The position numbers and the translations under genes were made by a program. From Sphaerodactylus townsendi (taxonomy: Eukaryota), in contig NC_059426.1 in the NCBI RefSeq assembly GCF_021028975.2, positions 93,992,001-94,056,000 on the forward strand: DNA of 64,000 bases, given 5' to 3'. Within the stretch, counting starts at the first letter, position 1; every line of letters starts with the position of its first letter. Shown here in pieces: positions 10,701-59,483 of the stretch. The notes under the pieces are model-generated. The model ran no database searches. It was not told where the DNA came from and saw only the letters and a program-made list of their open reading frames with translations.

Positions 10701-10946
10701 TCGTATTCCTTTCCAACTTTCTTCTTAGAATCATAGCATAGCAGTCAAAGGGCCTACTTCTTTGAGCAAATGCACCTCACCAAACACAGGAATCGATTCT
10801 TCCTAGGCAAATAAGTGTTACTGCATATCACCATTCCTCAACATCTACGCTAATTAGGCTGAAACACTTTTCTTCATAATGTGTCCCTTTTGTGGATGGA
10901 ACCAAGGGTACAGACATGGGTAAGCATAAAGTAGGTAAATACTCAC

Positions 10947-11164
10947 CTGTTTTTGGGTTCTACAAATGGGGAAGATCCATCTGTATCAGGATCCAAAATA
11001 TGATCTATTTCATTTTGTGCATTTTCATACATCTTTTTCCTCTCTACCAGTCCCTTGTTGTTATCAACTTGAGGAAAATCATAATACCCTTTCCGTTTGG
11101 CTTTCAGGCGTAATTTGTTGCGATAGTGCTCTATATCAGACTTCTGCTTGAGGGCTTTATTAAC
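10947..11164 (-). CDS. KIAA1549L: KIAA1549L exon (218 nt, phase 0-2): VNKALKQKSDIEHYRNKLRLKAKRKGYYDFPQVDNNKGLVERKKMYENAQNEIDHILDPDTDGSSPFVEPKN
   Basis: Acceptor ccttcag|, donor AG|gtgagt. HYRNKLRLKAKRKGYYDFP family motif. Confidence 0.97.
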
Positions 11165-12447
11165 CTGAAGGTAAGTAAAAACAAATTTAAAATGACAACA
11201 CCAAAATAAATTATTCTAACTAAACTAAAATTAGAAATTAGTTTTCATGGATAACATGTGCAAGAATACCTTCACGTTCACACCCATAGTCTAAATTAAG
11301 AGATTCACATATATACAGATTAATCTAATCACACTATTACCAGTATTCAGGTGAAGACAAACAAATTTATTGTGGCATAAGTTTTAGAGCCTACATTATG
11401 ACACTGATATGAAAAAAACTGTTAGTCTTTAATGTAAATCAAATCACTTTGATTTTGCTACTCCACTGATTATGAAATGCCAAATTCATGTGTTTTTTGG
11501 CAATCATTTTTATAGCTTATAGATTGCGTCTAATAACTGAAGGAACAGGGTGGAGTTATATTATTTGTAGTGTTAGAGCCATATTTTAATTTCCTAGACA
11601 AATGTTGATAGACCCTAACAAAATTGTAGTAATTGATCCATAGGCTTTCATGGAGATTAAAATGGGACACCATTATGAACTACCTGTGCCAAGCCCTAAG
11701 CAAATCAAGCCCTAAGCAAATCAAATCACAATAGTATTGAACTAAGAAACAGGGGAATTTGAAAGCATTCTTTGACTAAGAGCTCCCATTCTGAGACATC
11801 TGTTTACTTTTTCCAGTCACCATTCACCTTATGTGTAAGTATAAGTTATAATTTTCTGGGTCCACTCCTGGGCCCAGTCAATAGATGAGGTTTCCTTGTT
11901 TGGAACTCAATTCCCAGGTGCATACAAGCCAGATTATAGATTGGGAGCAGGGCTTAACTATGCAATTCAAAGGAGGTGGGCTTGAAGCCGCACCCATCGT
12001 GCCATGCAAACTGGCATGGACAGAATCTGGCGTACAAACACTTAGGTTGGCGAAAAGCAGAGCAGTAGTGCGGCACCCGAACCCAGAAATAAAGTTGGAT
12101 GCGATTGCTGCTGTGCCATTCAGGTCTGTGCTGGCATCCCGGGAGGGGGTGGGGTGGCATTCCCAGAGGTGTTTCCAGTTATTTTTAGACCAGGAATGCC
12201 CCCTTTCAGGGGTACATATTTACACAAGCAAACTGCATGGCATAATGCATTCTTAGGGAATGGACTAACTGGGTAGAGATGAATGTTTTCTCTCTGCTGG
12301 CACCCGTGCTACTGATTCCCTCTTTGGGAGAAGTGATGCAGTGCTGTCCCTGGCTGCCCCCCTACTCTCTCTCTATTGGATTAGAGTGTAAGTCTTCCTC
12401 TCCCCATGTTGTTTTCCCAGCCTGAAAAGGCAAAACTACATGGAGCT

Positions 12448-12535
12448 CAGTGGCGAAGCCACCAGGGGGAGGGGGGTGCGCCATGCACCAGGCGCATGGA
12501 TTTGGGTCACGCATTCTGGCCCAGCTACGCCTCTG
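12448..12535. mobile_element. 88-bp hAT MITE
   Basis: TIR cagtggcgaagc/gctacgcctctg; perfect TSD atggagct. Confidence 0.88.
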
Positions 12536-12800
12536 ATGGAGCTTGCATGTATACTTCAGACAAGTTGTCCTAATTTAGCAAAAACAGGCTCTGTTGGTTG
12601 GGAAGGCTCTTGTTCTTAGACTGCTTTGTGGCAGCTTTTATATATTCAGAGTGCCAGAAACAAAAAAAATGTTTCATATCCTACTGGATTTTAATATCTA
12701 TGTCAACCATTCACTGACTAATAATCCCTTAACTCTGAATATTTTATGAAGACTTGTCAATACACAAATCAATGCATAAAATAATCAATGGGATATGTTC

Positions 12801-13097
12801 AATGTATTGTCGAAGGCTTTCATGGCTGGAATCACTGGGGTGCTGTGTGGTTTCCGGGCTGTATGGCCGTGTTCTAGCAACATTCTCTCCTGACGTTTTG
12901 CCTGCATCTGTGGCTGGCATCTTCAGAGGATCTGATAGTAGGAAAGCAAGTGGAGTATATATACCTGTTGGAGTATCCAGGGTGGAGAAAAGAACCATTG
13001 TCTGTTAACAAGTAAAGGGTGCAATTAGCAAGCTAGATTTACATGTGTTGAGTGGGATCCACCCATTAGCATGTGAGTAACAATGAAGATAGCAAGG
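12801..13097 (-). mobile_element. Penelope-like pLTR fragment with mutated hammerhead
   Basis: gtcgaaggctttcatggctgg...ggcatcttcagagga motif; 16-bp flanking direct repeat tcaatgggatatgttc. Confidence 0.8.
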
Positions 13098-13117
13098 TCA
13101 ATGGGATATGTTCTCAC

Positions 13118-13290
13118 CTCTCCATTAGCAGTTTCCTGACTCCTATCTGATGTTGGATGTACAGGAGGCAAAGCTACAGGTTTTATGGCAATGAGTTGTA
13201 CGGATCCAGAGGATGTGTCAAAAGGATCAAGGGAAGACTTGGCAACACTGTCAAAGAGTATGTCTCCCTCTTCTTCATCACTTATGGGCA
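13118..13290 (-). CDS. KIAA1549L: KIAA1549L exon (173 nt, phase 1-0): VPISDEEEGDILFDSVAKSSLDPFDTSSGSVQLIAIKPVALPPVHPTSDRSQETANGE
   Basis: Acceptor gttttag|, donor GAG|gtgaga. PFDTSSGSVQLIAIKP motif. Confidence 0.96.
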
Positions 13291-14789
13291 CTAAAACACA
13301 TAGGGATTAAATCAGCATATATTTTTGGATTTTTTAAATTTTGAGCCTCTGAAGCAAAAAAAGAAAATGAATTCATGCATTAGATCAGGGCTGTGGCTTG
13401 CCATAGGCTTGAAAAACAGATCCATGAGGAATACAGGTTCCATGCTAACTTAAAGCAACAAAGAGGCAAGAAGAAATCACACATACTAGGCAGCTTTATG
13501 TTTTCCTAATTCTCCACCCATTCTTGCTCAAAACAAGCCTTCAGAATAGTAATCCATAATACATTTATTCTTTGAAGTACTCATAGTATATACACTCATC
13601 CTAATTTCTGGGGGAAACCCATAAGTAACCTGGAATAGCTATAGAAATTACCAGAAACTCTATGGTGCAGTCTTTTTTTAAAATTGCCTGCTGCCACTTA
13701 AAGAAGCAGCAGGCAAGGTCAGCTGCAGGGGGAAGCCTCCCATCATAGCAGGAGGCCTGGCAGCACTAATCCAAAGAGGCAGAGACACTGAAAGACATTC
13801 ATCAGAGGTTATTGGCAGTCATCCACAGCACAGGTTTAGTCAGATGGTGGTCACCATCTGCCACCATTGAAAATAAAAACACAATAAGCAATTACTAGTT
13901 AACTGATAATGTTACCTGCTTTTTTGTTTTTCAAAAAGTATGTCCAATGATTTTATAAAGAGAATTAATCTGTTAGCACTCATATGAGGTCTCATCAATA
14001 AAAATCAGTTCAAAAGCTAAATTATATTCTTTACCATCACCCCCACCCCCCCTCCAAAAAAAAATAACATTTTTCAGGCACACATCAGACCAGTTCTTTG
14101 GACTGGCAATCCCAACTTCAGGAGAAAATTCAAAGGCCATAACTAAACTGTACTGACAAAAATACATCCATGTCGTCAAGTTTAAGGTTCAGTTTATTAC
14201 CCCACATGGACTCTAAAGCTATCTCCAGGCATTTGGTTCTGGGTTTCTTCAGCCTCCGTGGGCCCATTCCACATGGGCCAAGAAAACAGGTGTAGGACAC
14301 TATATAATCCATTTTGGGAGGGGACTTTGCACAAATACCGCCCCCAAAACGAGTCTGCTCCGTTTTATTTTCCCCAACCCAGGTTTCTGAAAATCGCTAA
14401 ATAAGCAATCTTTTTGAAAAATCCCAGATTGGAGCTGCTCCCTCACGAACAGCCAGGCAGGAGGCACTTTATTTCCCTCCATTCTGCTCCATCCTCCATG
14501 GTCAGGGAGAAGCCACCCACCATTGCCTGGCCATTGCAGGGAGGCCCTTTTTCCTTTAAAAAATTTTTTGCGGGTTGCATTTGCATAGCTACGCAGCTGC
14601 AGCTGGTCATATTGTGGGATATCAACATGGATGTGGGGATTCATTTCACCATGCCTGTGTAGCTACACATGTGTTGCAGGACAATAGAAAAAACCAGAAG
14701 TGCCTTCATGTGAAGGCATGACAGCAACCTGGATTGTTTCCGTGGCCCCCAATTGCTGCCAGCATGGGATGCATGTGAATGGGAAAACA

Positions 14790-15135
14790 GGAAAGTGCAA
14801 CCTGTTACACATTTGCTGGGCAAAAGGGATCTGGGATCAACTAGAAGTGCAAGATAGAGCTTAAAGTCATTTGCATATTGGTGACACAAACAAACTATCT
14901 AGATGACCTCATCCAGCGATTTCACATAAAAAGAACATACGGGACAAGATGACATTTTGTAAGACTGAACAAGAGCCCCTCAGAATTATTTTCTGAATAC
15001 CACCCTCCAGGTAGAACTAGCACCCTGGCAGAATAGTTCCTCCCAATTCCAGCCCAAACATGTTGTCTGGAAGGATGCCATGACTGATGGTTCAAAAACC
15101 ACTGAGAGGTCCAGAAGGTCCTGGACATCCTCAGT
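14790..15135 (-). mobile_element. L2-like LINE RT relic
   Basis: CHQYAND(YADD-like)FKLYL frame. Confidence 0.5.
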
Positions 15136-15169
15136 ACAAATTATCCACAAGGGTGACCAAGGAGAAGAG

Positions 15170-15410
15170 GAAAAAGAGTTGGTGTTTATATCTTGCTTTT
15201 CTCTACCTTAAGAAGTCTCAAAGCAACTTATACTTCCTTCCTCTCTCCACAAAGGCACTTTGTGAGCTAGGTGTCACTGATAGAGTTCTGAGAGAACTGT
15301 GACTGGTCCAAGGTTAGTCAGTAGACTTCAAGTGAAGGAGCAGTGAATCAAACCTCATTCTCCAGATTAAAATCCACCACTCTTAATCACTACACCATCC
15401 TGGTTCTCAT
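15170..15410 (-). mobile_element. tRNA-derived SINE (Squam3-like), degenerate
   Basis: Reverse-complement similarity to the 55853 copy (ggtgtagtg head, ctttctc tail). Confidence 0.6.
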
Positions 15411-15819
15411 TTGTTTCAGTCCCATAACCAGACTTGAAACCAGATGATTGGAAGAGATCTTAAAAAACTGGTCTCATCTAGGAAGGCTTGGAGTTGTCCA
15501 GCCACTTACTCAAGAATAGAATCACTTACTCAAGAATAGAATATTTAAGACTGGTTGACAATTATTGAGATCTCTTTGGTCAAGGGTAGGGTTCTTTTAA
15601 GTGGAAGAATCAAACCCTGTTTGAAGGCTTCTAAAGAAGCGCTAACTACTTGAACCCCGTCAGCCAGTCTCATTCCCCAACCTGGAAAGATTTAAGTAAC
15701 CAGGAAGATCATAAAAGCAGGTGATAGAACTTAAACTTCCAAGGATTCTATCCATATCCTCCAACTGAATAAACTGAAAAATATCCCACATAACTGGACA
15801 TAATTGGATGCAGGAAGAC

Positions 15820-16184
15820 TGGCAATCTTAGGGGAGAAGAAAGCAGAAAAAGGGGAGAATCTATAAGGGCTTTCAGGAAAGGGAAAGAGGAAATATTAGG
15901 GGAAATGAAACAACTCCTGCAAGTCCTTGTGTGTTCCCAATCGTCTATATCCTAATAGCCAAGTGGGCCAAATCTGAGATTACTTACATCTGGATATTGG
16001 ACCCTTGTATCCAGATGTAAGTAATCTCAGATTTGGCCCACTTGGCTATTAGGATATAGACGATTGGGAACACACAAGGACTTGCAGGAGTTGTTTCATT
16101 TTCCCTAATATTTCCTCTTTCCCTTTCCTGAAAGCCCTTATAGATTCTCCCCTTTTTCTGCTTTCTTCTCCCCTAAGATTGCCA
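15820..16184. repeat. Near-perfect fold-back inverted repeat, 177-bp arms, 11-nt loop
   Basis: 15820-15996 is the reverse complement of 16008-16184, with one mismatch seen by eye. Confidence 0.95.
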
Positions 16185-16265
16185 ACCTCCTGGTGGGACC
16201 TGGGGGCCTGCTGGAATCACAACAGATCTCCCAACTGCAGAGATCTCCCAACTGCACTTCCCCCT

Positions 16266-16569
16266 TAGGATTGCCAGTTCTGGGTTGGAAAATTAATGGA
16301 GATTTGGGGGTTGAGACTTAGCAGTGAGGTTTGTGACCTCAGCAGGATATAATGCAAAGGAGTCCCCCCTCCAGAGCAGCCATTTTCTCCAGGGGAGTTG
16401 ATCTTTGTATCTGGAGAGCAGCTGTAATTCTGGGTGATTTCCAGTCCTCCCATGGCTACTTAGCAGGGTGGAGTTGAGGGTATAATACTTTCTGGGGTCT
16501 TTCTGCACCATTCCAAAGCTCTACTCTCTAAATCTCCAGGTATTTCTTAACCCAAAGTTGGTAACCCTA
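16266..16569. mobile_element. MITE with taggRttgcca-type TIRs
   Basis: taggattgcca ... ttggtaacccta. Confidence 0.6.
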
Positions 16570-17005
16570 GCTCCTTTTCATCTCCTATAAAGTCATAACT
16601 CAACAAAATATCTGAATTAGCCCAAAGATTTACACACCAATTAGAGTGCTCCTACAAATTCGAAAATAGTTCATGACAAAAAGGTAGATGAATAGAAGTA
16701 AAGACTTACAATAAAGAAAGGTAACTACTTTAAGGCTGTTAAAACAATATATAAATATTTGGAAACTCAGAAGGACATAATTCTGAGTTAACATGAACAG
16801 GACTGAGCAGCATGTTGCCTTGCATAACTGAAAAATGACCAGATGTCATCATGTCATAACAAGCAGAAACTAAAAGTGGAATTTCTTTTTTACCCAAGAA
16901 ACAGCTGTTTGATAAATGTCACTTAAATTACAAATCTGATTTCAACTTTTATTTTCATCCTACTGACACATGAACATAAAATCAGGATGTAGTCTACAAA
17001 TGTTA

Positions 17006-17981
17006 CCGTATATACCGGCGTATAAGACGACTGGGGGTATAAGACGACCCCCCCCTCTTTTCCAGTTAAAATATAGATTTTGGCACATACTTGCCGTATA
17101 AGACTACCCTGCAGCAGAGGCTGCGACGACACCCTGTGTGGCCTCGGCCTCAGGAGAGGCAGGCCGATCATTGCGGGGGTGGGACAGAGCCCTGCTGCCG
17201 CCGCCGGCACCCCCGGGTGGCCTTCCTTGGCCTCGGTGGAGGCCGGCCTATCGTCGCGGGGGCAGGACAGAGTGGCAGCAGCGGCACCCCAGGTGGCCTT
17301 GGTCTTGATCATCAAGGGGGCGGGTCGAAGAGCGGGCTGCGGCGACAGCGGCAACACTGGGATCCGCCCCGGCCGGAGGCCAGGTGCGACAGAGGCAGGA
17401 CACCTCCTGAGCTCCCTCCCCCTCACTCTCCCCTTTGAGTACCTCCCGCTCTTCACCAACTCCATGCCTTCCCTCTCAGCCACAACACCCACTCCTTCCC
17501 CCGCCTTCCACCACACCGTCCCATCTCTTCCTCTTTTCCTCCTTTTATCCCCTCCCCTTCCCCAGCTGCCCTAAAACCCCACTGCCTCGTTGCTGGCCTT
17601 CACGCAGGACTTCCGGTTTGTCAGGCCGCTGATCCCCGCTGGCGTGGGGTTGTCAACGGGGGTGCCCCCGGAGGAGTTCCCCTTCCCTGGCAAGCCCGGG
17701 GAGAGGACGGGGGAAGCCCCGCTGTCGAGGGGGCCATCCCCGGGGGTTCCCTCCACTGCGGGAGTCCCCCGGCCCATCCGCGCAGGAGCAGGGAACGCCC
17801 CTGGGCCCTCGTCGTTGCCGGGCTGGCTGCAGGGAGCTCCCTCGCTGGAGTGGCCAGTCGATCGGCCAGGCGGTGGCAAGTCTGAGAAGGGGGTGGGGGA
17901 TGCCCGGCGTATAAGACGACCCCCGACTTTTGATAAGATTTTCCTGCATTAAAAAGTCATCTTATACGCCGGTATATATGG
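17006..17981. mobile_element. Tc1/mariner (pogo/Tc2-like) non-autonomous element with CpG-rich interior
   Basis: TIR ccgtatataccggcgtataagacgac / gtcatcttatacgccggtatatatgg; TA TSD on both sides; subterminal gtataagac repeats. Confidence 0.9.
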
Positions 17982-18416
17982 TAGCAAACTTAAGCTGTCA
18001 TTTAGGTAAGCAATGAACTGTAAGCAAACACTGTGGACACTTCCATGTTTGCTCTGACCTCTTTCTCAGTGAATCCACTAAGAGTGTTCAAAAGAATACA
18101 ATTAAGCTCTATAATCACCATTTCAGAGGGTCATGAAACTGATAAAATGTGAGGATGTTCATGATCAGATCCCACCCCCACCCCCCAAGTTGTCACAATG
18201 TAAATCAAGATACTATGCAGCTTCTATTTACATTTCAAAAATGCTGGAAGGATCCAGTCAGAAATGTTCAGGCATCTTATCTGTTTTGACTGTCTTCAAT
18301 AAGCTGAAAAATGTATAAGGAACCTCGAGACACATCTAAGCATTGATACTGTGTGTTGAAACACACACCCCCCCCCGCCCCCGATCCTGGCCTTGGGTTT
18401 CATAAATACATGATAC

Positions 18417-18496
18417 CTGTGATAGGGATGGTACTGGACTGTCCGCCTTTCTTCAATGTCTCATGAACTACTGAAGCACTGGGAAAATCTATTTTC
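18417..18496 (-). other. Candidate 80-nt cassette exon (phase 2-1, KIDFPSASVVHETLKKGGQSSTIPIT)
   Basis: Acceptor gcattctgcag|, donor CAG|gtatca. Open frame returns to phase 1, matching the exon at 13290. Confidence 0.4.
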
Positions 18497-19845
18497 CTGC
18501 AGAATGCAGCTGTCTTTCAGAGTTTGAAAATATACTTGAACATACTTGTATATTTCCACTCTAATTATGAATGCTTTAACTACAATTTTTAAATATATGG
18601 TAAAGTCTTAAATCTAACATTTTATCATAGGGAGAGCAAAAAATCTCTAGTTGCTTGTTCTAATTAACACCATGGGTATGTGTGTGTGCGGGGGGGAGTT
18701 AATAGACAACATTTAAACTCTTTTTTTAACCTTTTGCTTTAACACAACTGAATGTCAGCATCCTTTTATAATCATTACTCCATCCCACTCTTTCTCAAGC
18801 TCAGGCATACAATTTACCACATTTATTTGAATGGAAAAGAAGAAAATCAGTTTGTTTCTATAGTAACTACAGTTTCCTGAAATATATTCTACATATTCAT
18901 ACAAGCATTCTTATGCTGCTGGGATTAATGTATGGAATAAAATTTGGCCACAGACTGTTATTGGTATGCTGGCTGACGGAAGCAGGGGCACAGCATATGG
19001 GACAGCTCTGAAATTGGGTAGAATGTCTGCTGTTCCCCAGTAATAACCTTCCCCCCGTCTGTTGCAAGGGGGAAAAAACAACACGCGGAGCAGCAAGATA
19101 GTGGGAGCCATCGGGGTGCTGGCATCTTGATGAACTCCCCTTACTGCAAGGGGGCATGAGCTACCTGCAGTCCCTGCCTGGGTATGCGGTACACATGATT
19201 ACCATCACCCCCCAGGCCTCTTATAGAGGCCCCCACCAAATGGGGAGGCCCGGCATGCAGCTCTTCCTCCCCTGAACGATTCCCTATGAGCAACTCACCA
19301 GGCTGTGACGAATTAATGTAAATCACAACAAAACACAACTAACAATATGGCAACACTACAAGGTCAAAAAACAAGGGAGGGTGGGTGAAAGAAGCCGCTG
19401 CAGCCCGAGCAGAAGAGAGGCCCGGGAAGGCCCGGCATGCCCTTACAAGGCTGCGGCCTTGCCCCCTCCACTTACATCACATGTTCGCGCCAGCAGCAGA
19501 ATGGCCCTGCCTGCTGGGCTGGACATTGGTGTTGAGCCCGCCCATTTCCCTGCCTGCTTCAGGCAGCAACCGTGGCCAAGGTCACTCTCAGTCATGCTTT
19601 GCTGCCTGAGGAGGGGAGAATGAGCTTGAGGATGTGGAAAGACAACACAGACAACCACCTTGTGCAGAATAAAATTTGGCCACAGGCTGTTTGTTGGTAT
19701 GCTGGCTGAAGGAAGCAGAGGTGCAGCATAGGGAACAGATCTGGCACTGGGCAGCTTGTCTGGTGCCCACCTGTGGTTGATGATGCAGTCAAGGAATGAA
19801 AGCCTTTAACAGTTTCAATTTCCTCACTGTCTACCCTAAAGCTAA

Positions 19846-19984
19846 GGCTCATTCCGCACATGCAGAATAATGCACTTTCAAACTGCTTTCAGTGCTCTTT
19901 GAAGATGTGGAATGGCAAAATCCACTTGCAAACAGTTGTGAAAGTGGTTTGAAAACGCATTATTTTGCGTGTGCGGAAGGGGCC
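19846..19984. mobile_element. Harbinger-like palindromic MITE
   Basis: ggctcattccgcaca...tgtgcggaaggggcc; taa/aaa flanks. Confidence 0.7.
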
Positions 19985-21180
19985 AAAGTAATTCCCCAGT
20001 AGTCATTACTTTTGTATTAACTGCTGTTCAGCTGTAGTTCTGCTTTGGCATTTTCTCCTTTAACTTTCAGCAGTAGTCATTTCAAGTCCTCACTATTTTC
20101 CTTTAGTAATGTATTATCAGCAGCATATCTCAAATTGTTAACATTCCTCCTCCCAATTTTAACACCACCTTCAACTCAATCCAATCCAGTTTTCCTTATG
20201 ATAGGTTCTGCAAACAGATTAAAGAGAAAAGGAGATAAAATTGTCTAACAACTTTGCCAGTTGGAAACCATTGTTTCTCCATATTCTATCCTAACAGTAG
20301 CCTCTCGTCCAAAGTGCAGGTTATGCATCAAAACAATCAGATGATGTGGCACGTGCATTTCCTTTGAAACCAGCCATAGTTTTTCATAATCCACACAGTT
20401 AAATCTATGAAACACAAGATTATTTTCTTTTGAAATTCTCTCATATCCTCTAGTGACCAATGTTAATTTTCAATATGATCTGTTGGGTCTCTTCCTTTTC
20501 TGAACCTAGCAGTGAATATCAGGCATTTGTTGTTCCATATATGGTAACAGTCTTTGTTGTAAGCTTTTCGTCATTGCTTTACTTACATGAAAAATGAATG
20601 TGATGGTCCAATAGTTGCTCCAATCTTTGACATCTCCTTTTTTGAGAACTTGAATGTAATTTGATCATTTCCACTCTGTGGGTCATTGTTTTGTTTTCCA
20701 TATTTTGATAGCATATTTTTGTCAAGATTTGGATGGACTCTGTTTCTGTGGCTTGAAATAGTTCTATCGATATCCCATCTACTCCTGGTGATTTGTTTCT
20801 CCCTATTGCTCTCAGTGCAGCTCTTACTTCACTTTCTAAAACTGTAGATTCTTCTTCAAAAGATTCTTCTTGGAAGGAATCTCTCATCCTAGCAGCTATT
20901 TTGTATAGTTCTTCAGTGTATGGTTCCACCTTTTCTTTATTTTGTCCTGCTGATCTTTCAGCATACTAACTGTGCTGTAAACTGCCCTTTGATTTCTTGG
21001 ATCTTGTGGAACAGATCTCCTTTTTTGTTGTTTTCTTCTATTTTTACACTGGTTATTATAACAGTACTCTTTGTCTCTGTGTATAAGTTGTTTTGATTCT
21101 GTTTCTGTCACTTTTTACTTTTGCTTCTTGTCTGATTTGGTAATTTAAAACATTTTCTCAGTCATCCATTGAGGCTTTTC
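19985..21180 (-). mobile_element. RTE-clade LINE ORF relic
   Basis: Frames EVRAALRAIGRNKSPGVDGISIELFQ and LWLVSKEMHVPHHLIVLMHNL...EATVRIEYGET are typical of RTE/BovB-type RT regions; frameshifted. Confidence 0.85.
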
Positions 21181-23811
21181 ATTTCTTTTGACACTGAATT
21201 TATTTCTTTGGGCTCTGAAAATAAACTGGAAATTAGCTGTTTTGGTCAGCTTGGGGATATCTGAAAGCTTCCAAAACACTCTCATATTCTTAGAGCAGTG
21301 GAAATTTATCTTCCAGAAATTTAGAAGTGTTTCAGGTATCAGGGATTGGAAACCAAGGGGGAAACCAAGGAAGGTGGTCTGCCATACAGTTGATTGGTGG
21401 CTTCATCCACCCTTTAAATTTTAAAAGGTCATTGTTTTTTGATAGGAAGACCTGGTCCTTTAATATTTAATAACTGCTGATCAGGTAGACCAGGCCTTCT
21501 GAGTAGATCTGGCCTCTCTACTATCCTCAGGAAGTAATGGTTTCTATATACCTGATCGACTGTTAGTCAGAATCTCCATTTTAAAGCACCAGTTTTACGA
21601 GGGTACACCTGGCCAGGTCTTCCCATAGAAAATAATGGTGCTTTAAAATTTAAAGGGGATGGAGACGCTGACTAACAGATGTTTGGAGAAACAACTTCCT
21701 CCTTCTCCCTCCTTTCTTGTTCATGCAGCCTCTGGGACTGAGGGAATTGGTGTGTGTGTGGGGGGGGGGACAGGTATTGATAAAATGTTCACCAATGCTC
21801 AATGCCCGAAAAAATCCCAAAATGTTAAGGAAAGTCCTAGTAATTCAGAATAACAAAAAGCATGCCCTCCCCAAATCTGAATTCATCCAGTTTTTACATG
21901 TACACTCCTAGATACAATAGGTTATGTCAGAATATATTTACAATAATATCACAACCATTTGAGATTATGTAAAAATAGTTAGTGTCCTTTCCAGAAAGCA
22001 CTAAGGGCTGATCACAGATATTATAATATTGGGCAGTGACTTGTTTCATGATCCTGCAAAATGTAGAGCAAATTAATGAAGTAACAGAAGTTTAATGGCA
22101 TTACTTCTATGATACCAGTACTCCAAACTAAGTGGTTTGGATCACCAGATACCACAATAGTTTGGTTGAAGTCCATAAGCCCCTAATTTACTTGCCACAT
22201 AGCTTACAACAATGTAGCTTTTTAAAAGATCCAACATAATGTCTAAACTGGGTCATAATGCAGAAGCTTCTCCCCTGTTTTCAGCTGAATATTCAGTAAC
22301 TTGCAGAGCATTAAGTAAACCCAAGAAGGAGCCTACAGCACTTCAGAGAATGTGCTGGTAAAAGAATCCTATTATGTCTGTGAGAACAGAGGCTTCCTGT
22401 TACAGAACTGCAGAGTCTATCTTCTAAAAAAGAACTGTAGCCCAAAGGCTTATTTTTTTCAGAGAGAGAAAAGTTTGCTAACAGAAAATACTCGTTTTTG
22501 TTCAGAGCTATTTAATGTTTGGTCATACATGCACAATGCTGTCCTGCATCACAACAGGTGCATTGCAGGAATGCTTGTTTCTGGCTTTCACCATTATTTG
22601 ATACAGACTGTAATCATGCAACTGAAGAACCCACACAAATGGGCCATAGAATAAAGCACTGAGCTTAGATATTATGTCTTCTGCCTGAAAATAGGGACCA
22701 TTCTCCTCCCCCATATAAACTAGAGCCAATGCTGTCTAAGGACTAAACAACCTTGCCTAAGTTAAAGGAACTCCATGTAACTGTAAAAAGAGTACCATCT
22801 AAAAATGAAAAACAGAGCAGAAAGCATTAAAACATGCCTCTAGCAAAAGTTACTGTCTTTTTTGGCAAAAAACCATCTGGAAAACTCTGTGACCTGTGAA
22901 GAGCTGATCTGTGATCTGTGCCATTATTCTATAAAATATGAGGATTTAAATTAGTTTTATTTTAAAGATATGATACAATTTTAACAATGAATGACAGGTC
23001 AATTCCTCCAAAACACTGGCTGCATCAGTCAATCTTTCCTGCTTCTATCAGTTCATCCAGCTCCTAATTGTCCACTTGCAGATGCCAACAGAACATTCTG
23101 TGTGTCTAATTTGGGATGCTTTTGAAAAGAATTATAATTTCAAGTTTTATCCTTTACAAGTAACCACCAAATGCTATCATTTTCCTCTCTATCTAAATGT
23201 CAGAGGGATAGGATCTAAAATTGGTTTGTTACTATGACAACTCATGAACCAACCTTAACTTTTTGGCTCAACAGTGCAATCCCATGGACAGTTACTCCAC
23301 TCTAAGCTCATTGACTTCAATGGGCTTTAACTGGAGCACCTCACTTTAGGATTACACTATTAATCAAGCAATCTGAATAGCAAAGAAATGTATTCCAATG
23401 TTCAGATATCCCTGAGATCCCATCTTTAAACCAAGATGTTAAAAGCTTAACCGGTAATGGACCAATGCATGCCCTCGACATTTGCTACCATGGAACTTTG
23501 TCAAGGACAGAAAAAAGACATACAGCACAAACCAGCAGCTTTTTAATCATGCCGAAATGTTTTCATTTAAATATAGCTTTCATGCATGCAAAAGAATAAA
23601 TATTAATTTTAGTGCCAAGGAAGCTCTACACATGCACCTGACTGAGCATGCCATGCTGTCAATTTCTTGCCATGAAAAGAAACAGGGAACCTTGCATACA
23701 TAGCATCACAGAATCAACTATATTCATATGAATATATGATTTCATTAAGATTCTAAGTAGCCTCCTTCGAATTGTACTGTATGTTACCCAAAGAGCTAGA
23801 TTCCTACTCAC

Positions 23812-23825
23812 TTTAACTGTTCTGT
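23812..23825 (-). other. Candidate 10/14-nt microexon ((T)EQL-K)
   Basis: ttttttccctcatattttctcaag|ACAG|AACAGTTAAA|gtgagt, with a UGCAUG cluster downstream. Confidence 0.45.
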
Positions 23826-24313
23826 CTTGAGAAAATATGAGGGAAAAAATATTTTACTTTTTACTTTATTTTGGATTTTTAACTCACCCTACCGCAAACA
23901 ATTATTTTGATACTTATACACTATTTTTCATTGCACTGGCAACCCAAAGCAGCTTACAGTATTCTCAATTTTATCCTCATAGCAACCACCCTCTGAGGCA
24001 GTTTAGGCCGAGAGAGTGACTGACCCAGTAAGCTTCCTGGGGGGTTTAAATTTGAGGTTCCCAGATACTGGTCCAATACTGTAACAATTACACTGCACTG
24101 GCTCATATGTAACAAATATGTAAAGTAATATAATTTATACCTTCACATTGTAAAATGGTAAGGGATTACTTTCTTTTCTTAAATGGGGTATTCTACATAA
24201 TACGAAAGCGGTGATTTCAATAGCCATTAATCTAAAGGCACATTATAATTGTAGCCACTGTTGATTCAATGAAATATCAGTACAATTTTAATGAAGAAAC
24301 TAAAATTTCTTAC

Positions 24314-24337
24314 CAATTTTCTTTGAGGAATTAAAAC
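24314..24337 (-). other. Candidate 24-nt microexon (GFNSSKKI in phase 1, or VLIPQRKL in phase 0)
   Basis: Long pyrimidine tract ttttctgtttatttgtttttcttgacatttag|; donor TTG|gtaaga; length divisible by 3. Confidence 0.45.
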
Positions 24338-24539
24338 CTAAATGTCAAGAAAAACAAATAAACAGAAAATAATGTCCTCACTAAGATATATCAGACTGAC
24401 AAATGGACAATAATCATGTCTCTTTAATTGCTCCCAGGAAAGATTAAAAAAAACAAATTGCATTTTAAACATTCCAATTTTATTTGTTATAAATTACACG
24501 TCTTTTTCTCTTCAAATTTGAATTTTTAACGTCAAAAAT

Positions 24540-27110
24540 GAAGGAATTTGTTGCACTACTGACTTTTAAAGTTAAACAGAAAATAAAGGTTTTAACAAAA
24601 ATATGGATTTACAGAATAAAGTAGAGTTGATGGATAAAATAAGATTTAAGAATAAAAAAGTAATATCTGAGTATTACATTAACTAATATGATTTGTATGT
24701 TATTTCAAAATAATTACGTCAAAACGTGGAATGAAGTAAAAAAAGATTTGTTAAGGGGAAGCAAACGTCAACTATCCTTGTTATGGATAATTGCTGTGAT
24801 TAAGATGAATGTTAATTCTGCTTCAAACCACACCTGTGTTAGCAAACAATATTACATTTAAACAATGACAAAAGGGAATAAACCTCAGACTAAACATAAA
24901 ATTCTTCAAAATGCAAGGGAAAGAGGAAGATTAGATTTACTTGACCTGAAATTGTATTTTGCCACCTGTTGCTTGGTTTGGTTGATTTTGTTGAGAAATA
25001 GAAGGCTTTTGGAATTAGAGGGACATGATAAGAGATTCAGATGGACCCTCAAAGGTGTAGCCCCCATCTTCTATTAGCTCCCATTGGAAACAATGGGGGA
25101 CGGGGCATCCCCTTTTGAAGTCCATAACTTTGGGCCCCCTGAACCAAACCTCACCAAACCTGGGTAGTGTCATCAGGAGAGTCTCCCAACAAATCCCTGA
25201 AATTTTGGTGCTGCTAGCCTAAAAACAGCACCCCTGCAGGCCAAAAACTGAAAAAAAAACCCACTAAAAACCCCACAAACAGGAAGCAGAGCTTCGGACA
25301 TGTAACGGGGGGAGGGGGGGGTCAAAACTGGGAACATCCTTGAAGAGAACACATGGTTTTGAAGATCCACGACACAGTTTGAGGTAGAATGATATAAGAA
25401 TGATTATTATGTTATTGCCAAAGGGTATTAGTTTCTGTTGAAACTTGAAACAGAAGAATGAATGAAAAAGCATATGACAAAAAGGCCAGTAAAGATGCAA
25501 TATAGAAATGGATCAATGGGAAATTATGTAGTTAGAGGACCTTAAATTTATATTAAGTTCCAGTCTTAAAATGTTTCTATAAAAGGACACATCATTGATA
25601 TTTGTCACAGGAGAAATTAGTAAAAATGTATCAAAAGGTTCTGAATGTGTGTTGGAAATGGGAACACCATGAAAGGTCATTTTACCATTTATGATGGACT
25701 TGTCTCTAATTTTTTTTAGCTTTATTACAACTACATTCAATAATTTGGAAGATTTTAAAGACTAATGTAGAAATGAAACTGGAGGCTTACCTTACAGGTA
25801 TTATGGATAGGTAGTTTGAAAAGAGATATAGAATTTCTGTAGATTTTCCAAGCTGTGTGGTTGTGGTCTGGTAGTTTTTGCTCCTAATGTTTTGCCTACA
25901 TCTATGGCTGGCATCTTCATAGGCATGTCATGGTAAGATGCTTTTCTCTGCATAACACAGCGTAGAGATATTGTGTGATGGGGCATATATTTTATCCATC
26001 TCACAGGTAGGAGGGGGGGTGAGGTATACTTTCATGTGTCCAGGTGGAGTTCAATTGCAGTTGCAGTAGCATTGACAAATGCATTTGCAATCTCATTCAC
26101 AATTACATTAGAATATGTCTCTGCATTTGAATGTCTTGCTTTTTGGTTTTGGTGTTTTTTAGAACTGGTAGCCAGGTTTTGTTGATTTTCAGACACGCTT
26201 CCTTTTTGTTGAAACTGTCCCGGTGTTTGTGGGTTTCAATAGCTTCTCTGTGTAATCTGACATAGTAGTTGTTGGAGTTGACAAGAATTTCTGTGTCTTT
26301 AAATAAGATCCCATATCCGATTATTTTCAGCTACTGATGATACCTCAGGCTATGAGTCGGCAGTGCTTTCATGTTCTTTGTGCAACTGCAACTGACACAC
26401 ATGCCTGGACACATGCAAATGCACATCACTTTCCTCATCTGTGAAGTAGACAAACATATACCACCACACAATCACTTCACACTGTGCTATGGAGAGAAAC
26501 ACATCTTACCGTGACATATCTCTGAAAATGCCAGTGATAGATGCAAGAGAACAGCCACAACAGCCAATTCATTCTGACTCTGAAAGCCTTCAACAATATA
26601 CAGAGCTTTATTTTTATATATTATACCAGCAGTGAAAGTATTGGATACGCAAAAATGGAAAACTTCCTCTGTACCCGCAATATGTCTTTGTTTGTTTGTT
26701 GGATTTAAATCTAAGAGAAGAATGTCCTGGGAAGATTGAAATCAGCTGAGATGGCTAAACTTACTTCCTTGATTACAGAAAATAATCTACTGTAACTTTA
26801 TAGATAGCTGAAAAATCTTGATAGACTTTTTACTTAAAATGGAAAAAATGAACTGATCTGTGGATTTGAAGACGAGGAGAATAAGAAAATAGAGAAAATA
26901 GTAATTCATATTTAATTAGTAAGAATTCAGTAGCAATGAACTGAATTTTACTTCTATATTGGCAACTAGAAAGCAAGTGGTGAATTCTTAATTGGATTTG
27001 TATTTAGCGCAGAAGAAATCAGAAGCCGATCTTTTTATTTTTCAGTAGCGTTCTTGTTTGTATGTAGCTTTAATTGCTGTTAGTCTTTTAAAACATTAAT
27101 AAAATAAGTT
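24540..27110 (+). mobile_element. Deleted L1/Tx1-like LINE ORF2 3' relic with nested insertions
   Basis: KILQNARERGRLDLLDLKLYFATC resembles the L1 GGL.LP..K.YY segment; ends at aataaaa; interrupted at ~25045-25340 and ~25820-26600. Confidence 0.7.
25820..26600. mobile_element. Penelope-like (Poseidon-type) 3' fragment with inverted pLTR
   Basis: Minus-strand GIY-YIG C-terminus YGILFKDTEIL...VRLHREAIETHKH...NKKE...INKTWLPVLK (~26160-26320). pLTR is repeated in opposite orientation at ~26380-26600. Confidence 0.75.
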
Positions 27111-27250
27111 CAAACTGAAAAAAGTAAGCAATAATCTATGAAGTGTGGAAATGGCTACAATAGATTGAAATAAATTGGATCATTGTGGCATCTTAAAGAC
27201 TAACATGTTTTCATTCTAGCATAAACTTTCATTGACTGATCACACAGCTT

Positions 27251-27482
27251 CCGTGTTTCCCTGAAAATAAGACAGTGTCTTACATTAATTTTTGCTCCCA
27301 AAGATGTGCTATGTCTTATTTTCAGGGGATGTCTGATTTTTCTGTGTTTTGTTCATCGGGCATGCTTCCAAACAAAAACTTTGCTACATCTTACTTTCGA
27401 GGGATGCCTTATATTTTGCACTTCAGCAAAACCTCTACTATGTCTTATTTTCAGGGGATGTCTTATATTCAGGGAAACAGGG
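27251..27482. mobile_element. Tc2/pogo-like MITE
   Basis: TIR ccgtgtttccctgaaaataagac / gtcttatattcagggaaacaggg; TA at the right flank. Confidence 0.75.
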
Positions 27483-27709
27483 TACATAGGAAAAAACTGT
27501 AAATACCAGAGTCAAAGGACCATGAAATACAAGAACTACCAGGTGATATGTAATTATGTCACATTTAAATGTGATAAAGAAAAGAATGTAGATCATTCTC
27601 ATGAGCAGTAATTGGTGATAACATCAATTTTCGTATTTTTAGTTAGTTAGCAATTTGAATGGCTGTGAAATCTGTATTTGATTCTGATCATTAGACGGGG
27701 ACTCACACC

Positions 27710-28899
27710 CAGAGGCATAGCTAGGAAAAATGCAGCCAGGACAAAAATCTGAATTTTGTGCCCCCACCCACCCCCCATGTAGGTGACCGCCCTCCCCCAT
27801 CATGACCAAACAATGATTTTTTGCACCAGGTCATATAAAAATAAAATAAAAGGACCCACAAAGGCACTTCCAAATGGCATTAATTTGTTGTCCTGTATGA
27901 CACTCCAGGGCAGAAGAAGCATCAGGCTTGGTATATATGTGCGGAGACTTAGGTAGTAACGTTTAACTTTTACACAAAAGCCCTTAAGACTAGCAATATA
28001 GAAGGGATTTCAACAATTGATACAAAATCAGAGTGAGGGGGAGAGTGATAGGGAGTTCTCAAATTGCCTAGATGATAAACCCTAAGCAGAGCATTAAAAA
28101 TGCAGCCAAAAAAAGATTTTAAAAATGTGGCCAAAATCCATAGGTTCCAAGAGACTGTCTAGTAAAAACCCATGTACTTGGTGTCTTATTTTTTTTAAGG
28201 GAGCAAACACCACTCCTTCAGGAACATAATTCTGTCCTATCTAGTAGCACACATACAATAAGCAATTTGTAGTTCCCTAAAGTCTGTGCCAGGGAGGCTT
28301 GCTGGGGATGGTGGGGACACTGGGAGGGCTTGCTCTGCCTGTGTATCCTGTTATCCATGGACAGGGAGGTGTGCTGTGGATGGCAGGGGGTTGGGAGGGT
28401 TTGCTCTGCCAATGGATCCTGCAATTCATGGGCTGGGAGGTGTGCTGGGGATGGGGGGAGGCTGGATCCTGCAATCCATGGGCAGGGAAGCGTGCTAGGG
28501 ATGGGGAGTAGCTTGTAGAGCTTGCTCTGCCTATGGATCCTGTGATCCATGGACAGGGAGGCTTGCTGGCATGGGGAAAATTGCACCCAGGGCAACACCT
28601 GCTCTGGGCGACCCCTTGCCCCCCCGCCCCACTAACCTTAGCTGGTGGCAGTCTTGGGTGGCAGTCCCTGGTGGGGCCTGGTGGGGCTGGACATGGGCAC
28701 CCAGCTCAGGCCTCTGCCAGGCCGTGCAGGCCTGAGGGGCGCCCGACAGCGGCCTCCGCCAGGACCGGCAGGTCCAAGTTGGGCTGAGGAGGGAAAGAGG
28801 GGTGTGGGGGCAATTTTCCACATGACCAGATCATGTGACTAGATCGGCAGCAGCCCAGGGCATATGTCCCTATATGTCCCCATGGTAGTTACGCCCCTG
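27710..28899. mobile_element. Non-autonomous hAT element with internal minisatellite (~28290-28575)
   Basis: TIR cagaggcatagc/gttacgcccctg; perfect TSD ctcacacc. Confidence 0.87.
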
Positions 28900-30115
28900 C
28901 TCACACCTATCTGTATATCAGAGATGTACATTATGCACTCTTGGGATTTTAAAATCTACTCAGTGAAGTTAGGATTATCTATTACTCAGAAATAGCCTAC
29001 TACCACTTAGAGCTATTGTGAACTGGTTCTATACTTTTCTTCAAAACATTTGAATTGTACACTTATCTATTTCTCAAGTGGGGTCCTCATCTGTAATATG
29101 TGAACTGGGGTCACACTGATATTACCAGATTTTCCTGCAAAGTTTGTGCACCCCCAGGTTTGCAGAAAAATCTGAAATCTTTTTTAAAATGATGGTTTAA
29201 ATTTCAAAAATGCATAATCTGTGCAAACAAAAACAATGCAGTTACCTTTCTTCATCAGAGCTGGTAGTGTTGGCATCCAGGAGCCTCTCTGGGCCTGGTT
29301 GCAGTGATGTCTGGGAGCTGAGTTCAACAACATGGGAGCCACTTCCAGACACTGCAGCTACTGCAGCTGGGCCCAGAAATGGCTGCTGAGGCCTGAGCTG
29401 CACCTGGCTCAATGAAAGGGGGAGGATGGGATTCCACCCCTCCATGAGTCTTGCGGGGCCCCATTAGCAACAGGAGATCAAAGCTTGGGGGAGAAATGGG
29501 AGGAATAATGATGAGGGGAAAAAGAGCGGATATTATCAGAGAATGGTAGGGGTAGAACTAGAGAAGGGGTAAGAGGGAGAAAGAGAGGTGAGAAAGATGG
29601 ACAGAAGTGGAGGGGTGAGAAAAAGAAAGAACACTGTTAGAGAGGGAAGGAAGCAAAGGTGGAGAAGATTCAATCTCCACACATTTCTTTCAGATCCCCA
29701 CTTGTAATTATATAATCCTTAGTAATTCCTGCATTTCATGATTCTGCTTTTTACAACTTCTTTCCACCTCATAAACAACACATATCTGCCAATGATCAAT
29801 TCTCCTTAGGTCTGACTTGCTCCAGTACACAAAAACTTGTGCTAGAATAAAAATGTATTTCCATGACTATCCTTCTAGAAATATTCCACAAGTCAGTTGC
29901 TATGTATTATTAGTTATTGTTAATGTGTCAGTCCTGCAAGCAAAGGGCTTTGTTGTCATCATGAGTCTATGCACAATACTACTGCAGTATTCTTTACTGA
30001 AGTATTCTTTACTTCTGAGCAAAGAACTACTCTAGTGTTCAATAGGTCTTCCTCAGAGTATGTGTTTAAGAAGAGAACCCCAAATTTCCAATCTTCAGCA
30101 TCGGCAACCACTTAC

Positions 30116-30150
30116 ACTGTAATGCCAGAACAATGTTCTATTCTGTGAAA
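30116..30150 (-). other. Candidate 35-nt microexon (phase 1-0, VSQNRTLFWHYS)
   Basis: Acceptor ctgctaaattttgcattaatacag| with UGC motifs; donor gtaagt. Confidence 0.3.
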
Positions 30151-30901: not shown

Positions 30902-31029
30902 CATTTCTCTTTCTTCCCTCCTCTTTTGTCATTTTCTGCTGTGCCATTACTTTCTGCGGAGAGCCTCTGCCTGAATTGGGCTTTCCTGATTTGTTGCTGA
31001 TGACAGAACCATTCTCACTGGGCGACCTG
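30902..31029 (-). CDS. KIAA1549L: KIAA1549L exon (128 nt, phase 2-1): SRSPSENGSVISNKSGKPNSGRGSPQKVMAQQKMTKEEGRKRN
   Basis: Acceptor ttgcag| (tandem CAGCAG), donor G|gtgaga. Matches KIAA1549L SRSPSENGSVISN. Confidence 0.95.
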
Positions 31030-57021: not shown

Positions 57022-59483
57022 CTTTGAAATAAAAAAAAAAGAGGCATTAGTCTATAATAATTAATTACCCAATTTATTTAAGGATCTAAAACTGATTTTT
57101 ATAATGCTAAACAAACTTTATCAATATGTCTTTACCACAATTTAATCTCATATAAATACTGAATGGTAGCTCAGGTTCAGATAGTGGGATGGTTTGGATT
57201 ATGTCTTTCTAATGTGTAGAGCTGGAGTTAGAGCTCCCTTTCATGCAGTCCATAATGCCTGAGACATCCAAACATGAGCATACTATTTGCATAGCATGGA
57301 TATCCACACACATAAAAAGCCTCTCATTATTGGTTCATGTTGGCCCCAACATTTTTATTATTTTTCTTTACTATTGTAGTAATGTTGGTTTTCTCTATTT
57401 CCACTGATTTCAATGGGAAGCAGATGTTTGTCTATAGCCTTTTCTCTATTAGTCAAGAAACTGCCAGGAATTTAACCCCTTGCCCAACAGATCCTCCCAC
57501 CTAAATTTTGTTCAGAGAAAACACTTCAATTTTTATATGCAGCTAAAATACTCATTTGGTAGAGGCAGATATTTGGAAACCTAAAAAAACAGGTGCTGGC
57601 TAAATCAAATACAATAAATGGCAATCCTCGTGGGTTAGTCCACCCACTTATATCTAAATGAAGCTGGGAGACTATTTTCAAACAAAAATTGACTACATAG
57701 GCATGACCTGCTGCCTTGGTGCACCTTACCTCACTGCACTTAAGTGCTTGAAGCATTTGAATTCTATCCAGACTCTACCTGAAGTGGTTTGACTAAAAGA
57801 AAAATGCACATAGACCCCACCTCTCCAGCTCTCTGTACATATAGAACTTTAGACTGTTTGTCCTTTCTCCATTCTGAGGCTAATAGGATCTAGAGGGTTT
57901 TTAAGTGAGGTGATGGTGTGCAAGGACTTTTTAAAGGAGCATTAAAGACACTGAGAAACATTAGAACATACACTTCAGTGATCTCTTGTGTCTCATTCAG
58001 TCTGGCCCTGTTTTGTGCATACGCTGGGCACAGAATTTGCCCTTGCATTTGCACTACCTGACTGCATGCCAGTGTATTCAATCAAAGCATTTGGCAAGCA
58101 GCAGATAACGCCTGTCATTGGGAAAAGGAAGTGTGGCATTCTCATACACTTCCCCTGTAGTGCTGCCTGTAGTGCTGCCTGTCCATATGCCAATGTATGT
58201 TAACAGGTGTAGCCTAAGGAAGAATAGGACAGTAAGCAAAAAGAAGAAACTGCATTAGAATATAATCAAATGCCTCAAGCAAATTCTCTCTTACCTAGTG
58301 TAACATGAGGAGTCATTGAGCCATTAACTAGTTTTGACTAGCAGTTATAAAAAATAATAAAGATTTGTGTGTTATCTAAAGTTACTGTATTCGCAAACAC
58401 AATTTTTTTGTTCTTCTGAATTATCACATTTAAAGAAATGTGTGTAAAACACAGAGACATCAGCCTAATCCCTGTTGAAATCCATATGGTCAAGAGGAGA
58501 TATTGAACACAGATAGTTAATGTGTCTAAATTGGCTCTATAACATAGGCATATATGACTGCATACAATATATGCACATGGCTGCATGTTACACACACAGT
58601 ACATATAAATGTATGCAAACTGCTATTTAAAAATCTAAGTTATACAAAAGTTTACTCAGTGCTTTTATTAAGGAAACAGCATATGAAACTGACCACTGGT
58701 ACTGTGTTTTCTGTAAAAAATTTAACTATCAAACTTTAACTGCACATTTCTACCACAGCTCACAAAGAGTTTGAAAGACTCCTTACCAATCTGCTAGGAA
58801 ATTAAGCCTTTGGAGAATGCTTTCAGTATTTGCCTGATGAATTAAACGCCTTTCAGTATTATGTTAAAAGCCCGCAGACAATTTTTCCAGGCAAACGTTT
58901 ACAGAAGAGAAACCATAAATACTGTATGCTCTGCAGGTTTGCCAAGTAGCATAGCAACAACATAAAAGAACTAAGCAGCCTTACCAAAGCACAGTGTTTT
59001 ATGGTACTGTTCACATAAGCTTTGGAGGAGGATTGAAAGCCAGTGTGGTGAGGTATGGTGCTAAAGGTGTTGGACTAGGAAGGACCCCATTGATGTCTGC
59101 GAGGTGATCTTGGACCAATCACATACTCTCACTGTGATCCAGGGTAGTATTTGGGTAGGAGACTCTCCAAGGAATACCAGGGCTGAGACACAGAGCCAAG
59201 CACCACCAAACATCTCTTGCCTTGAAAAACCTACAGGTTTACCATAAGTCAGTTGTGATCTAATGGTAAAGGGAAGGGGGAGTATGCAGGAATTACTACA
59301 TATACAGAGCCCTTCAGGGACGGGGCGGTATAGAAGCCTATACCGGGACAACAAAGATAATTCAGAAGTGACATTCACACAGTACATGAAGACTGATTAT
59401 CAGTATACACCTCCACACTCTTATTTACAAAACTAATTACTGAGCACTTGGGCCAAGGAAGCAGCTGCAACTTTGGTAACTCT

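What the first reader, a model, noticed from the sequence alone, without database searches (positions are those of the whole stretch)
18417..30150. Hidden chain of frame-compatible micro/cassette exons in the 17.6-kb KIAA1549L intron
Seen: four short minus-strand segments in apparently non-repeat sequence have AG/GT boundaries: 35 nt (30116-30150), 24 nt (24314-24337), 10 or 14 nt (23812-23821/23825) and 80 nt (18417-18496). Two stop-free paths bridge the phase-1 intron. Path A is 24+10+80=114 nt (GFNSSKKI-EQL-KKIDFPSASVVHETLKKGGQSSTIPIT). Path B is 35+24+14+80=153 nt (VSQNRTLFWHYS-VLIPQRKL-TEQL-KKIDF...). The 4-nt-shifted acceptor (aag|ACAG|) exactly compensates for the 35-nt exon, so the 24-nt exon would be read in two frames. 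Knowledge: neural microexons are driven by SRRM3/4 (UGC near the 3' splice site) and RBFOX. Inference: an unannotated combinatorial insert in the cytoplasmic tail, absent from the human protein as I recall it (RKRN|VPASDEEE).
Basis: partly seen in the sequence, partly recalled or inferred. Interest (0 to 1): 0.78.

Follow-up and report, generated by a model that had tools for sequence, protein, structure and literature searches.

The report
One real KIAA1549L microexon, three pseudoexons
Of the four short "hidden exons" proposed in this lizard KIAA1549L intron, only the 24-base one is genuine, and it is an ancient alternative microexon already annotated in many vertebrates; the other three and the proposed exon chain look like chance.

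Summary
All four minus-strand segments exist exactly as described, with AG/GT borders and the stated frames. The chain is not beyond chance. At the strength of its weakest sites the 17.6-kb intron holds 170 pseudoexons and about 15,600 three-exon and 234,000 four-exon stop-free, frame-restoring chains. Composition-matched random sequence gives medians of about 6,000 and 66,000.

The 24-nt segment (24314-24337, minus) is real. It encodes G-FNSSKKI between ...KEEGRKRN and VPISDEEE. The same 8-aa insert (GFKSSKKI and variants) is annotated at this junction in geckos, lacertids, Rhineura, Sceloporus, Hemicordylus, birds and alligator. Lungfish has GFRTKKKI, and frogs have 9-aa forms. Skipped isoforms are annotated beside it. 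It aligns to the starling intron (21/24 nt, both splice sites kept) and has the best crude splice-site score of 1,052 frame-preserving candidates.

The 35-, 10/14- and 80-nt segments have no counterpart in 201 matched ortholog isoforms, 52 of them squamate, and no similarity in the starling intron. The 35- and 80-nt segments have weak sites.

No RNA runs could be found, so usage in this species is untested. No lizard intron DNA could be fetched.

Verdict: a known conserved microexon plus three pseudoexons; the two-frame combinatorial insert is not supported. This scan had not noted the microexon before.

The parts
30902..31029 (-). Constitutive KIAA1549L exon upstream of the intron (RSPSEN...KEEGRKRN, ends in phase 1)
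   Evidence: tblastn of alligator, python-group and lungfish orthologs.
24314..24337 (-). Genuine 24-nt alternative microexon. It adds G-FNSSKKI and regenerates the Val codon (G|TG).
   Evidence: The same 8-aa insert sits at this junction in 26 of 149 orthologs first fetched and in 30 of 52 matched squamate isoforms, and also in frogs and lungfish. Starling ortholog: 21/24 nt identical. Ranked 1 of 1,052 frame-preserving candidates by crude PWM sum.
24338..24372 (-). Polypyrimidine tract and 3' splice site of the microexon (T-rich run ending ttgacatttag)
   Evidence: Acceptor PWM rank 27 of 1,160 AG sites. The TTAG acceptor is conserved in starling.
24307..24313 (-). 5' splice site of the microexon, gtaagaa, identical in starling
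   Evidence: Donor rank 18 of 904 GT sites.
13118..13290 (-). Constitutive exon downstream of the intron ((V)PISDEEEGDILFD...)
   Evidence: The phmmer search found 30 relatives.
23172..23251 (-). Unexplained conserved intronic element about 1.06 kb downstream of the microexon (0.88 kb in starling).
   Evidence: blastn against the starling intron: 78% over 82 nt, E 7e-12; alignment. No Rfam match and fold z-score -0.6.
30116..30150 (-). Claimed 35-nt exon: most likely a pseudoexon
   Evidence: Acceptor rank 191 of 1,160. No starling counterpart, best E 2.2. No ortholog isoform carries it.
23812..23825 (-). Claimed 10/14-nt exon with a shifted acceptor: most likely a pseudoexon, although its donor is good
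   Evidence: Donor rank 5 of 904 and acceptor ranks 103 and 49. No starling counterpart, best E 1.6. No ortholog isoform carries it.
18417..18496 (-). Claimed 80-nt exon, the linchpin of both paths: most likely a pseudoexon
   Evidence: Acceptor rank 199 of 1,160 and donor rank 100 of 904. No starling homology. No ortholog isoform carries it. It is single-copy DNA, with one third-position difference in the related organism B.

Best explanation
The intron between the KIAA1549L exons at 31029-30902 and 13290-13118 (minus strand) contains one real cassette exon, the 24-nt microexon at 24337-24314. It is phase 1 to phase 1. When included it inserts Gly-Phe-Asn-Ser-Ser-Lys-Lys-Ile into the cytoplasmic tail. 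The insert lies about 110 residues after the transmembrane helix, between a basic stretch (KEEGRKRN) and an acidic one (VPISDEEE), and the Val codon is regenerated. A long T-rich tract before ttag and a gtaagaa donor define the exon; both are conserved to birds. Inclusion is alternative, because relatives have both forms annotated. The 35-, 10/14- and 80-nt segments are ordinary intronic pseudoexons. Paths A and B are two of many thousands of stop-free chains that any intron of this size offers. Shown here: the sequence, the conservation, the annotated inclusion and skipping in relatives, and the chance expectation. Inferred: that this species splices the exon in the same way, and that inclusion is enriched in neural tissue.
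For: The junction inserts in full-length orthologs are GFKSSKNI (alligator X4), GFRTKKKI (lungfish), and GLTKQKRKI and GLKKHKKKI (frogs). Of the 149 orthologs first fetched, 114 matched the junction pattern: 26 have the 8-aa insert, 2 have the 9-aa insert, 78 have none and none has a 38- or 51-aa insert. In 52 matched squamate isoforms from 11 species, the junction is either plain V (22) or the 8-aa microexon (30). Isoform pairs differing by exactly 8 aa occur in Heteronotia, Paroedura, Lacerta, Podarcis, Rhineura, Sceloporus and Hemicordylus. At the DNA level, window 24341-24286 aligns to starling L004 59209-59267 (E 4.6e-8), with 21/24 exon bases and both splice sites kept. The 24-nt exon ranks first of 1,052 frame-preserving stop-free candidates. 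Chains are expected by chance. The other three segments have no starling homology, and the 80-nt and 35-nt ones have weak sites.
Against: There is no RNA evidence for this species. The single run search returned only DNA-like holders. My 7.75-kb query was only about 5% exonic, right at the tool's one-twentieth cut-off, so this blank says nothing. No lizard or gecko intron DNA could be fetched, because the gene ranges were 101-242 kb. A gecko-specific young exon would therefore escape both the starling comparison and annotation-based checks. This species has Asn where relatives have Lys at insert position 3. The splice scoring is crude.
Confidence: 0.85

Rival explanations
1. One reading: all four segments are cassette exons used combinatorially (Path A is 24+10+80, Path B is 35+24+14+80), with the 24-nt exon read in two frames.
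For: The borders and frames add up as described. The 10/14-nt segment has a good donor, rank 5 of 904.
Against: Thousands of equally valid chains exist by chance. None of 201 matched ortholog isoforms, including 52 squamate ones with up to 9 isoforms per gene, has any insert longer than 9 aa here. Every annotated microexon copy uses the G-F-x-S-S-K-K-I frame. The 80-nt exon needed by both paths has weak sites and no starling homology.
Confidence: 0.03
2. One of the three other segments is a young, lineage-specific, low-inclusion or NMD-coupled cryptic exon in this gecko lineage, without forming the proposed in-frame chain. The 10/14-nt or 80-nt segment is the most plausible.
For: The 80-nt segment is single-copy, and its only difference in the related organism B is at a third codon position, which has almost no statistical power. 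The donor at 23811 is strong. Lineage-specific exons would not appear in the starling or in other species' annotations.
Against: Used alone, the 10-, 14-, 35- and 80-nt segments all shift the frame. There is no support of any kind beyond the dinucleotides. Pseudoexons of this quality number about 170 in this intron.
Confidence: 0.08
3. None of the four segments is spliced in this species; the microexon has been lost functionally here.
For: Usage in this species is untested. There is a Lys-to-Asn change at insert position 3.
Against: The frame, both splice sites and the pyrimidine tract are intact. The exon is kept in four other geckos and across sarcopterygians.
Confidence: 0.03

Closest known systems
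The annotated 24-nt alternative exon of KIAA1549L orthologs (for example RefSeq isoform pairs of Heteronotia binoei X1/X3, Paroedura picta X1/X2, Lacerta agilis X1/X2, chicken X1 and alligator X4)
   Same: Same junction (…RKRN | V-P-x-SDEEE), same length, same phase and the same peptide apart from one residue (GFNSSKKI against GFKSSKKI). The DNA is orthologous to the starling copy, with both splice sites conserved.
   Different: Asn replaces Lys at position 3 in this species. Inclusion in this species has not been shown by RNA.
Vertebrate neural microexons (SRRM3/4-dependent class of 3-27 nt, as described by Irimia et al. 2014; cited from my own knowledge)
   Same: It is 27 nt or shorter, frame-preserving, deeply conserved together with its immediate flanks, alternative, and lies in a charged surface or tail region of a brain-expressed gene.
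   Different: In the gecko there is no UGC between the pyrimidine tract and the AG; the nearest is at -125. Tissue specificity and SRRM4 dependence are untested, and no paper in the searchable library links KIAA1549L to microexons.
Intronic pseudoexons (decoy AG...GT pairs)
   Same: The 35-, 10/14- and 80-nt segments behave like them: abundant at this score level, not conserved and not annotated anywhere.
   Different: Nothing distinguishes them, except that the 10/14-nt segment has an above-average donor.

Membership tests
KIAA1549L (UPF0606, Pfam PF12877) gene, cytoplasmic-tail region | The flanking exons encode the conserved KIAA1549L tail in the right order and on the right strand | tested here: met
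   Ten exons map colinearly on the minus strand at 80-98% identity to alligator and python-group orthologs. All hits carry PF12877 and KIAA1549L names.
Conserved KIAA1549L 24-nt alternative exon | Same junction, length, phase and peptide as the annotated insert in orthologs | tested here: met
Conserved KIAA1549L 24-nt alternative exon | Orthologous DNA with conserved splice sites | tested here: met
   Starling L004 59213-59236, E 4.6e-8, with the TTAG and GTAAGAA sites kept.
Conserved KIAA1549L 24-nt alternative exon | Both included and skipped mRNAs exist in this species | not testable with these tools
   No RNA run was found; only DNA contigs were laid. Both forms are annotated in 7 other squamates.
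SRRM3/4-dependent neural microexon | Length of 27 nt or less, frame-preserving | tested here: met
   24 nt, phase 1 to phase 1.
SRRM3/4-dependent neural microexon | UGC-containing element just upstream of the 3' splice site | tested here: not met
   In the gecko the nearest TGC upstream is at -125; in the starling they are at -56 and -63.
SRRM3/4-dependent neural microexon | Neural-specific inclusion and dependence on SRRM3/4 | not testable with these tools
   No RNA data were available.
RBFOX-enhanced exon | (U)GCAUG within about 300 nt downstream, conserved | tested here: not met
   None within 300 nt in the gecko; one UGCAUG at +180 in the starling only.
Genuine cassette exons (claimed 35-, 10/14- and 80-nt segments) | Conservation, or presence in any annotated ortholog isoform | tested here: not met
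   No insert of this kind in 201 matched isoforms. No starling homology. Squamate intron DNA could not be tested.

The most novel reading that the evidence does not exclude
The 82-nt element at 23172-23251 is conserved between gecko and starling at about the same distance (roughly 1 kb) downstream of the microexon. It could be a distal intronic regulator that controls inclusion of the 24-nt microexon, rather than an unrelated enhancer. Separately, a gecko-specific exonisation of the 80-nt segment cannot be excluded without RNA.
Probability: 0.12. Interest if true: 0.4.

Novelty: already known. Interest (0 to 1): 0.15.

Why it matters
It matters little beyond annotation. The result confirms that this genome carries the ancient KIAA1549L tail microexon, which is conserved from lungfish to birds and squamates. 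It also shows that stop-free, frame-compatible AG/GT chains in long introns carry no evidential weight on their own. The microexon's function and regulators are unstudied in the searchable literature. The insert places a small Ser- and Lys-rich patch between a basic and an acidic stretch of the tail. The conserved element 1 kb downstream is a small open lead.

Tried and rejected
1. RNA evidence. The look-up of sequencing runs gave only four DNA-like holders. My query (window 10900-18650) was too intron-heavy for the one-twentieth word cut-off, and the cap was one search.
2. Read laying could therefore only lay DNA contigs. It showed high-copy repeats at 18800-21200, a single-copy 80-nt segment and holes over 21800-24399. 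The holes may be filter artefacts and were not interpreted.
3. Squamate intron DNA. The gene ranges were too long: Eublepharis 242 kb, Varanus 120 kb, Tiliqua 101.6 kb, Elgaria 190 kb, Podarcis lilfordi 155 kb and Python 104.7 kb. Chicken X5 and Anolis X2 were not on record.
4. Short fragment proteins were all single-exon genomic fragments with 2.9 kb or less of upstream intron and no microexon.
5. Rfam and folding of the conserved element gave nothing. A SNORD91-like hit just upstream of the microexon scored 24 bits against a gathering score of 51 and was treated as chance.
6. Literature searches gave nothing relevant: KIAA1549L or D430041D05Rik with microexon, SRRM4 or alternative splicing.
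7. The joined Path A and Path B sequences were not sent to any search tool.
8. Contigs behind mammal-like fragment proteins were not fetched.
Full report
**Observation.** All four minus-strand segments are present with the stated borders and lengths. The flanking KIAA1549L exons are 31029-30902 (…KEEGRKRN, ending in phase 1) and 13290-13118 ((V)PISDEEE…). tblastn of orthologs maps ten colinear exons on the minus strand: 57025-56963, 47404-47204, 46016-45843, 40919-40758, 34000-33815, 31029-30902, 13290-13118, 11167-10946 and 5737-5594, plus the microexon discussed below. The exons are about 92% identical at protein level to four geckos (Paroedura, Euleptes, Heteronotia, Eublepharis) and 88.5-90.8% identical to other lizards. 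The genome is therefore a squamate, probably a gekkotan.

**Is the chain more than chance?** It is not.
- With cut-offs at the weakest claimed sites there are 170 pseudoexons of 150 nt or less.
- There are 22 / 707 / 15,620 / 234,437 stop-free chains of 1 / 2 / 3 / 4 exons that carry phase 1 to phase 1.
- The opposite strand gives 19 / 346 / 6,901 / 87,674.
- Forty first-order Markov simulations give medians of 15.5 / 392 / 6,024 / 65,586.

Two such paths, including one that needs a 4-nt acceptor shift, are therefore expected in any intron of this size. The 80-nt segment, on which both paths depend, has an acceptor ranked 199 of 1,160 and a donor ranked 100 of 904. The 35-nt segment's acceptor ranks 191 of 1,160.

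**What is real.** I ran a phmmer search of the downstream exon against 1.84 billion representatives. A full-library search was needed because the word search sees only proteins of similar length. It returned full-length KIAA1549L orthologs, several with a short insert exactly at the RKRN|V junction (names):
- alligator X4: GFKSSKNI
- lungfish (Protopterus): GFRTKKKI
- Xenopus tropicalis: GLTKQKRKI
- Mantella: GLKKHKKKI

The window's 24-nt segment encodes G-FNSSKKI in the same frame.

A word search with the alligator protein, restricted to the region around the junction, gave 686 hits. Among the 149 proteins fetched up to that point, 114 matched the junction pattern. Of these, 26 have the 8-aa insert, 2 have the 9-aa insert and 78 have none. 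Eight have 1-5 extra residues that look like shifted donors or acceptors. None has a 38- or 51-aa insert.

I then opened ten squamate clusters. They gave 52 matched isoforms from Heteronotia, Paroedura, Lacerta, two Podarcis species, Zootoca, Rhineura, Sceloporus, Hemicordylus and two Anolis species. The junction is either plain V (22 isoforms) or the 8-aa microexon (30 isoforms). Isoform pairs differing by exactly 8 aa occur in seven of these species. That shows the exon is alternative in relatives.

**DNA-level conservation.** The starling gene could be fetched as L004. Its microexon lies at 59213-59236. A blastn comparison of the whole gecko intron with the starling intron gives only two significant intronic blocks.
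- The first is the microexon with its donor flank: window 24341-24286 against L004 59209-59267, E 4.6e-8. Of the exon bases 21 of 24 are identical, and TTAG| and |GTAAGAA are kept.
- The second is an unexpected 82-nt element: window 23251-23172 against L004 60116-60197, 78% identity, E 7e-12.

The 35-, 10/14- and 80-nt segments have no counterpart. Their best short matches have E values of 2.2, 1.6 and 0.058, and the last dissolves on alignment. By the crude PWM sum, the 24-nt exon ranks first among 1,052 frame-preserving, stop-free single candidates in the intron.

**Mechanism.**
- Shown: a phase 1-to-1 cassette of 24 nt sits behind a long T-rich tract with a gtaagaa donor.
- Shown: inclusion inserts GFNSSKKI between a basic stretch and an acidic stretch of the cytoplasmic tail and regenerates the Val codon. 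The transmembrane helix is encoded by exon 40919-40758.
- Inferred: this species uses the exon alternatively, as its relatives do, and probably with neural enrichment as for most conserved microexons.
There is no UGC within 120 nt upstream of the 3' splice site and no GCAUG within 300 nt downstream in the gecko. The starling has one UGCAUG at +180.

**Limits.**
- No RNA evidence was obtained. My 7.75-kb query was only about 5% exonic, at the tool's holder cut-off, so the blank is uninformative.
- Laying those contigs on 18400-24399 showed high-copy repeats over 18800-21200. The 80-nt segment is single-copy, with one third-position difference (18457) in organism B.
- The same call showed holes over 21800-24399, which I do not interpret because the tool filters records without notice.
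- Squamate intron DNA could not be fetched, because all gene ranges exceeded 100 kb. A young gecko-specific exon therefore cannot be formally excluded.
- The joined Path A and Path B sequences were not sent to any search tool; exons were handled one by one by reference.
- I did not fetch contigs for fragment proteins that looked mammalian.
- Whether the microexon exists in human or other mammals was not examined.

**Comparison and novelty.** The real feature is the annotated 24-nt alternative exon of KIAA1549L, an ancient sarcopterygian microexon. It is not a new kind and not new as a member, apart from a Lys-to-Asn difference. It resembles the neural microexon class in size, frame and conservation, but it fails the UGC-motif test here, and its tissue specificity is untested. 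The searchable literature says nothing about it. The combinatorial chain is best regarded as not real.

**Scores.** Interest is 0.15. Confidence in the main reading is 0.85.

Noticed in passing
window 23172-23251 (minus), matching L004 60116-60197: An 82-nt intronic block is 78% identical between gecko and starling (E 7e-12). It lies about 1 kb downstream of the microexon in both species. It contains stop codons in all likely frames, has no Rfam match and has no unusual fold. It may be a distal splicing element or an enhancer.
   Followed up: partly
window 18800-21200: This is a high-copy repeat block. Contig word depth reaches 1e3-1e7 against about 78 for unique DNA. An extremely abundant unit of about 141 nt lies around 19845-19985 (joints that 'go back 141'). 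LINE reverse-transcriptase-like ORFs lie on the minus strand at 20245-21111.
   Followed up: no
window 24343-24427 (minus): A weak SNORD91-like Rfam match (24.2 bits against a gathering score of 51, E 0.22) lies immediately upstream of the microexon's 3' splice site. The region is poorly conserved in starling, so it is probably chance.
   Followed up: partly
orthologs P0105-P0109 (Zonotrichia), P0056 (emu), P0133, P0137 and P0145: Some bird models carry other tiny variants at the same junction (GEN, VRCAL, GE...). They look like shifted donors or acceptors of the flanking exons or model artefacts. They are unrelated to the claimed segments.
   Followed up: no
window 18457 and 18628: These are the only two differences between the window and the related organism B (run X4) across 18400-19052. 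One falls at a third codon position of the claimed 80-nt frame, which is far too little to indicate constraint.
   Followed up: no
window 21800-24399: Contig coverage in all four DNA runs is nearly absent here, including over the microexon. The tool filters human-like or conserved records silently, so this was not interpreted.
   Followed up: no
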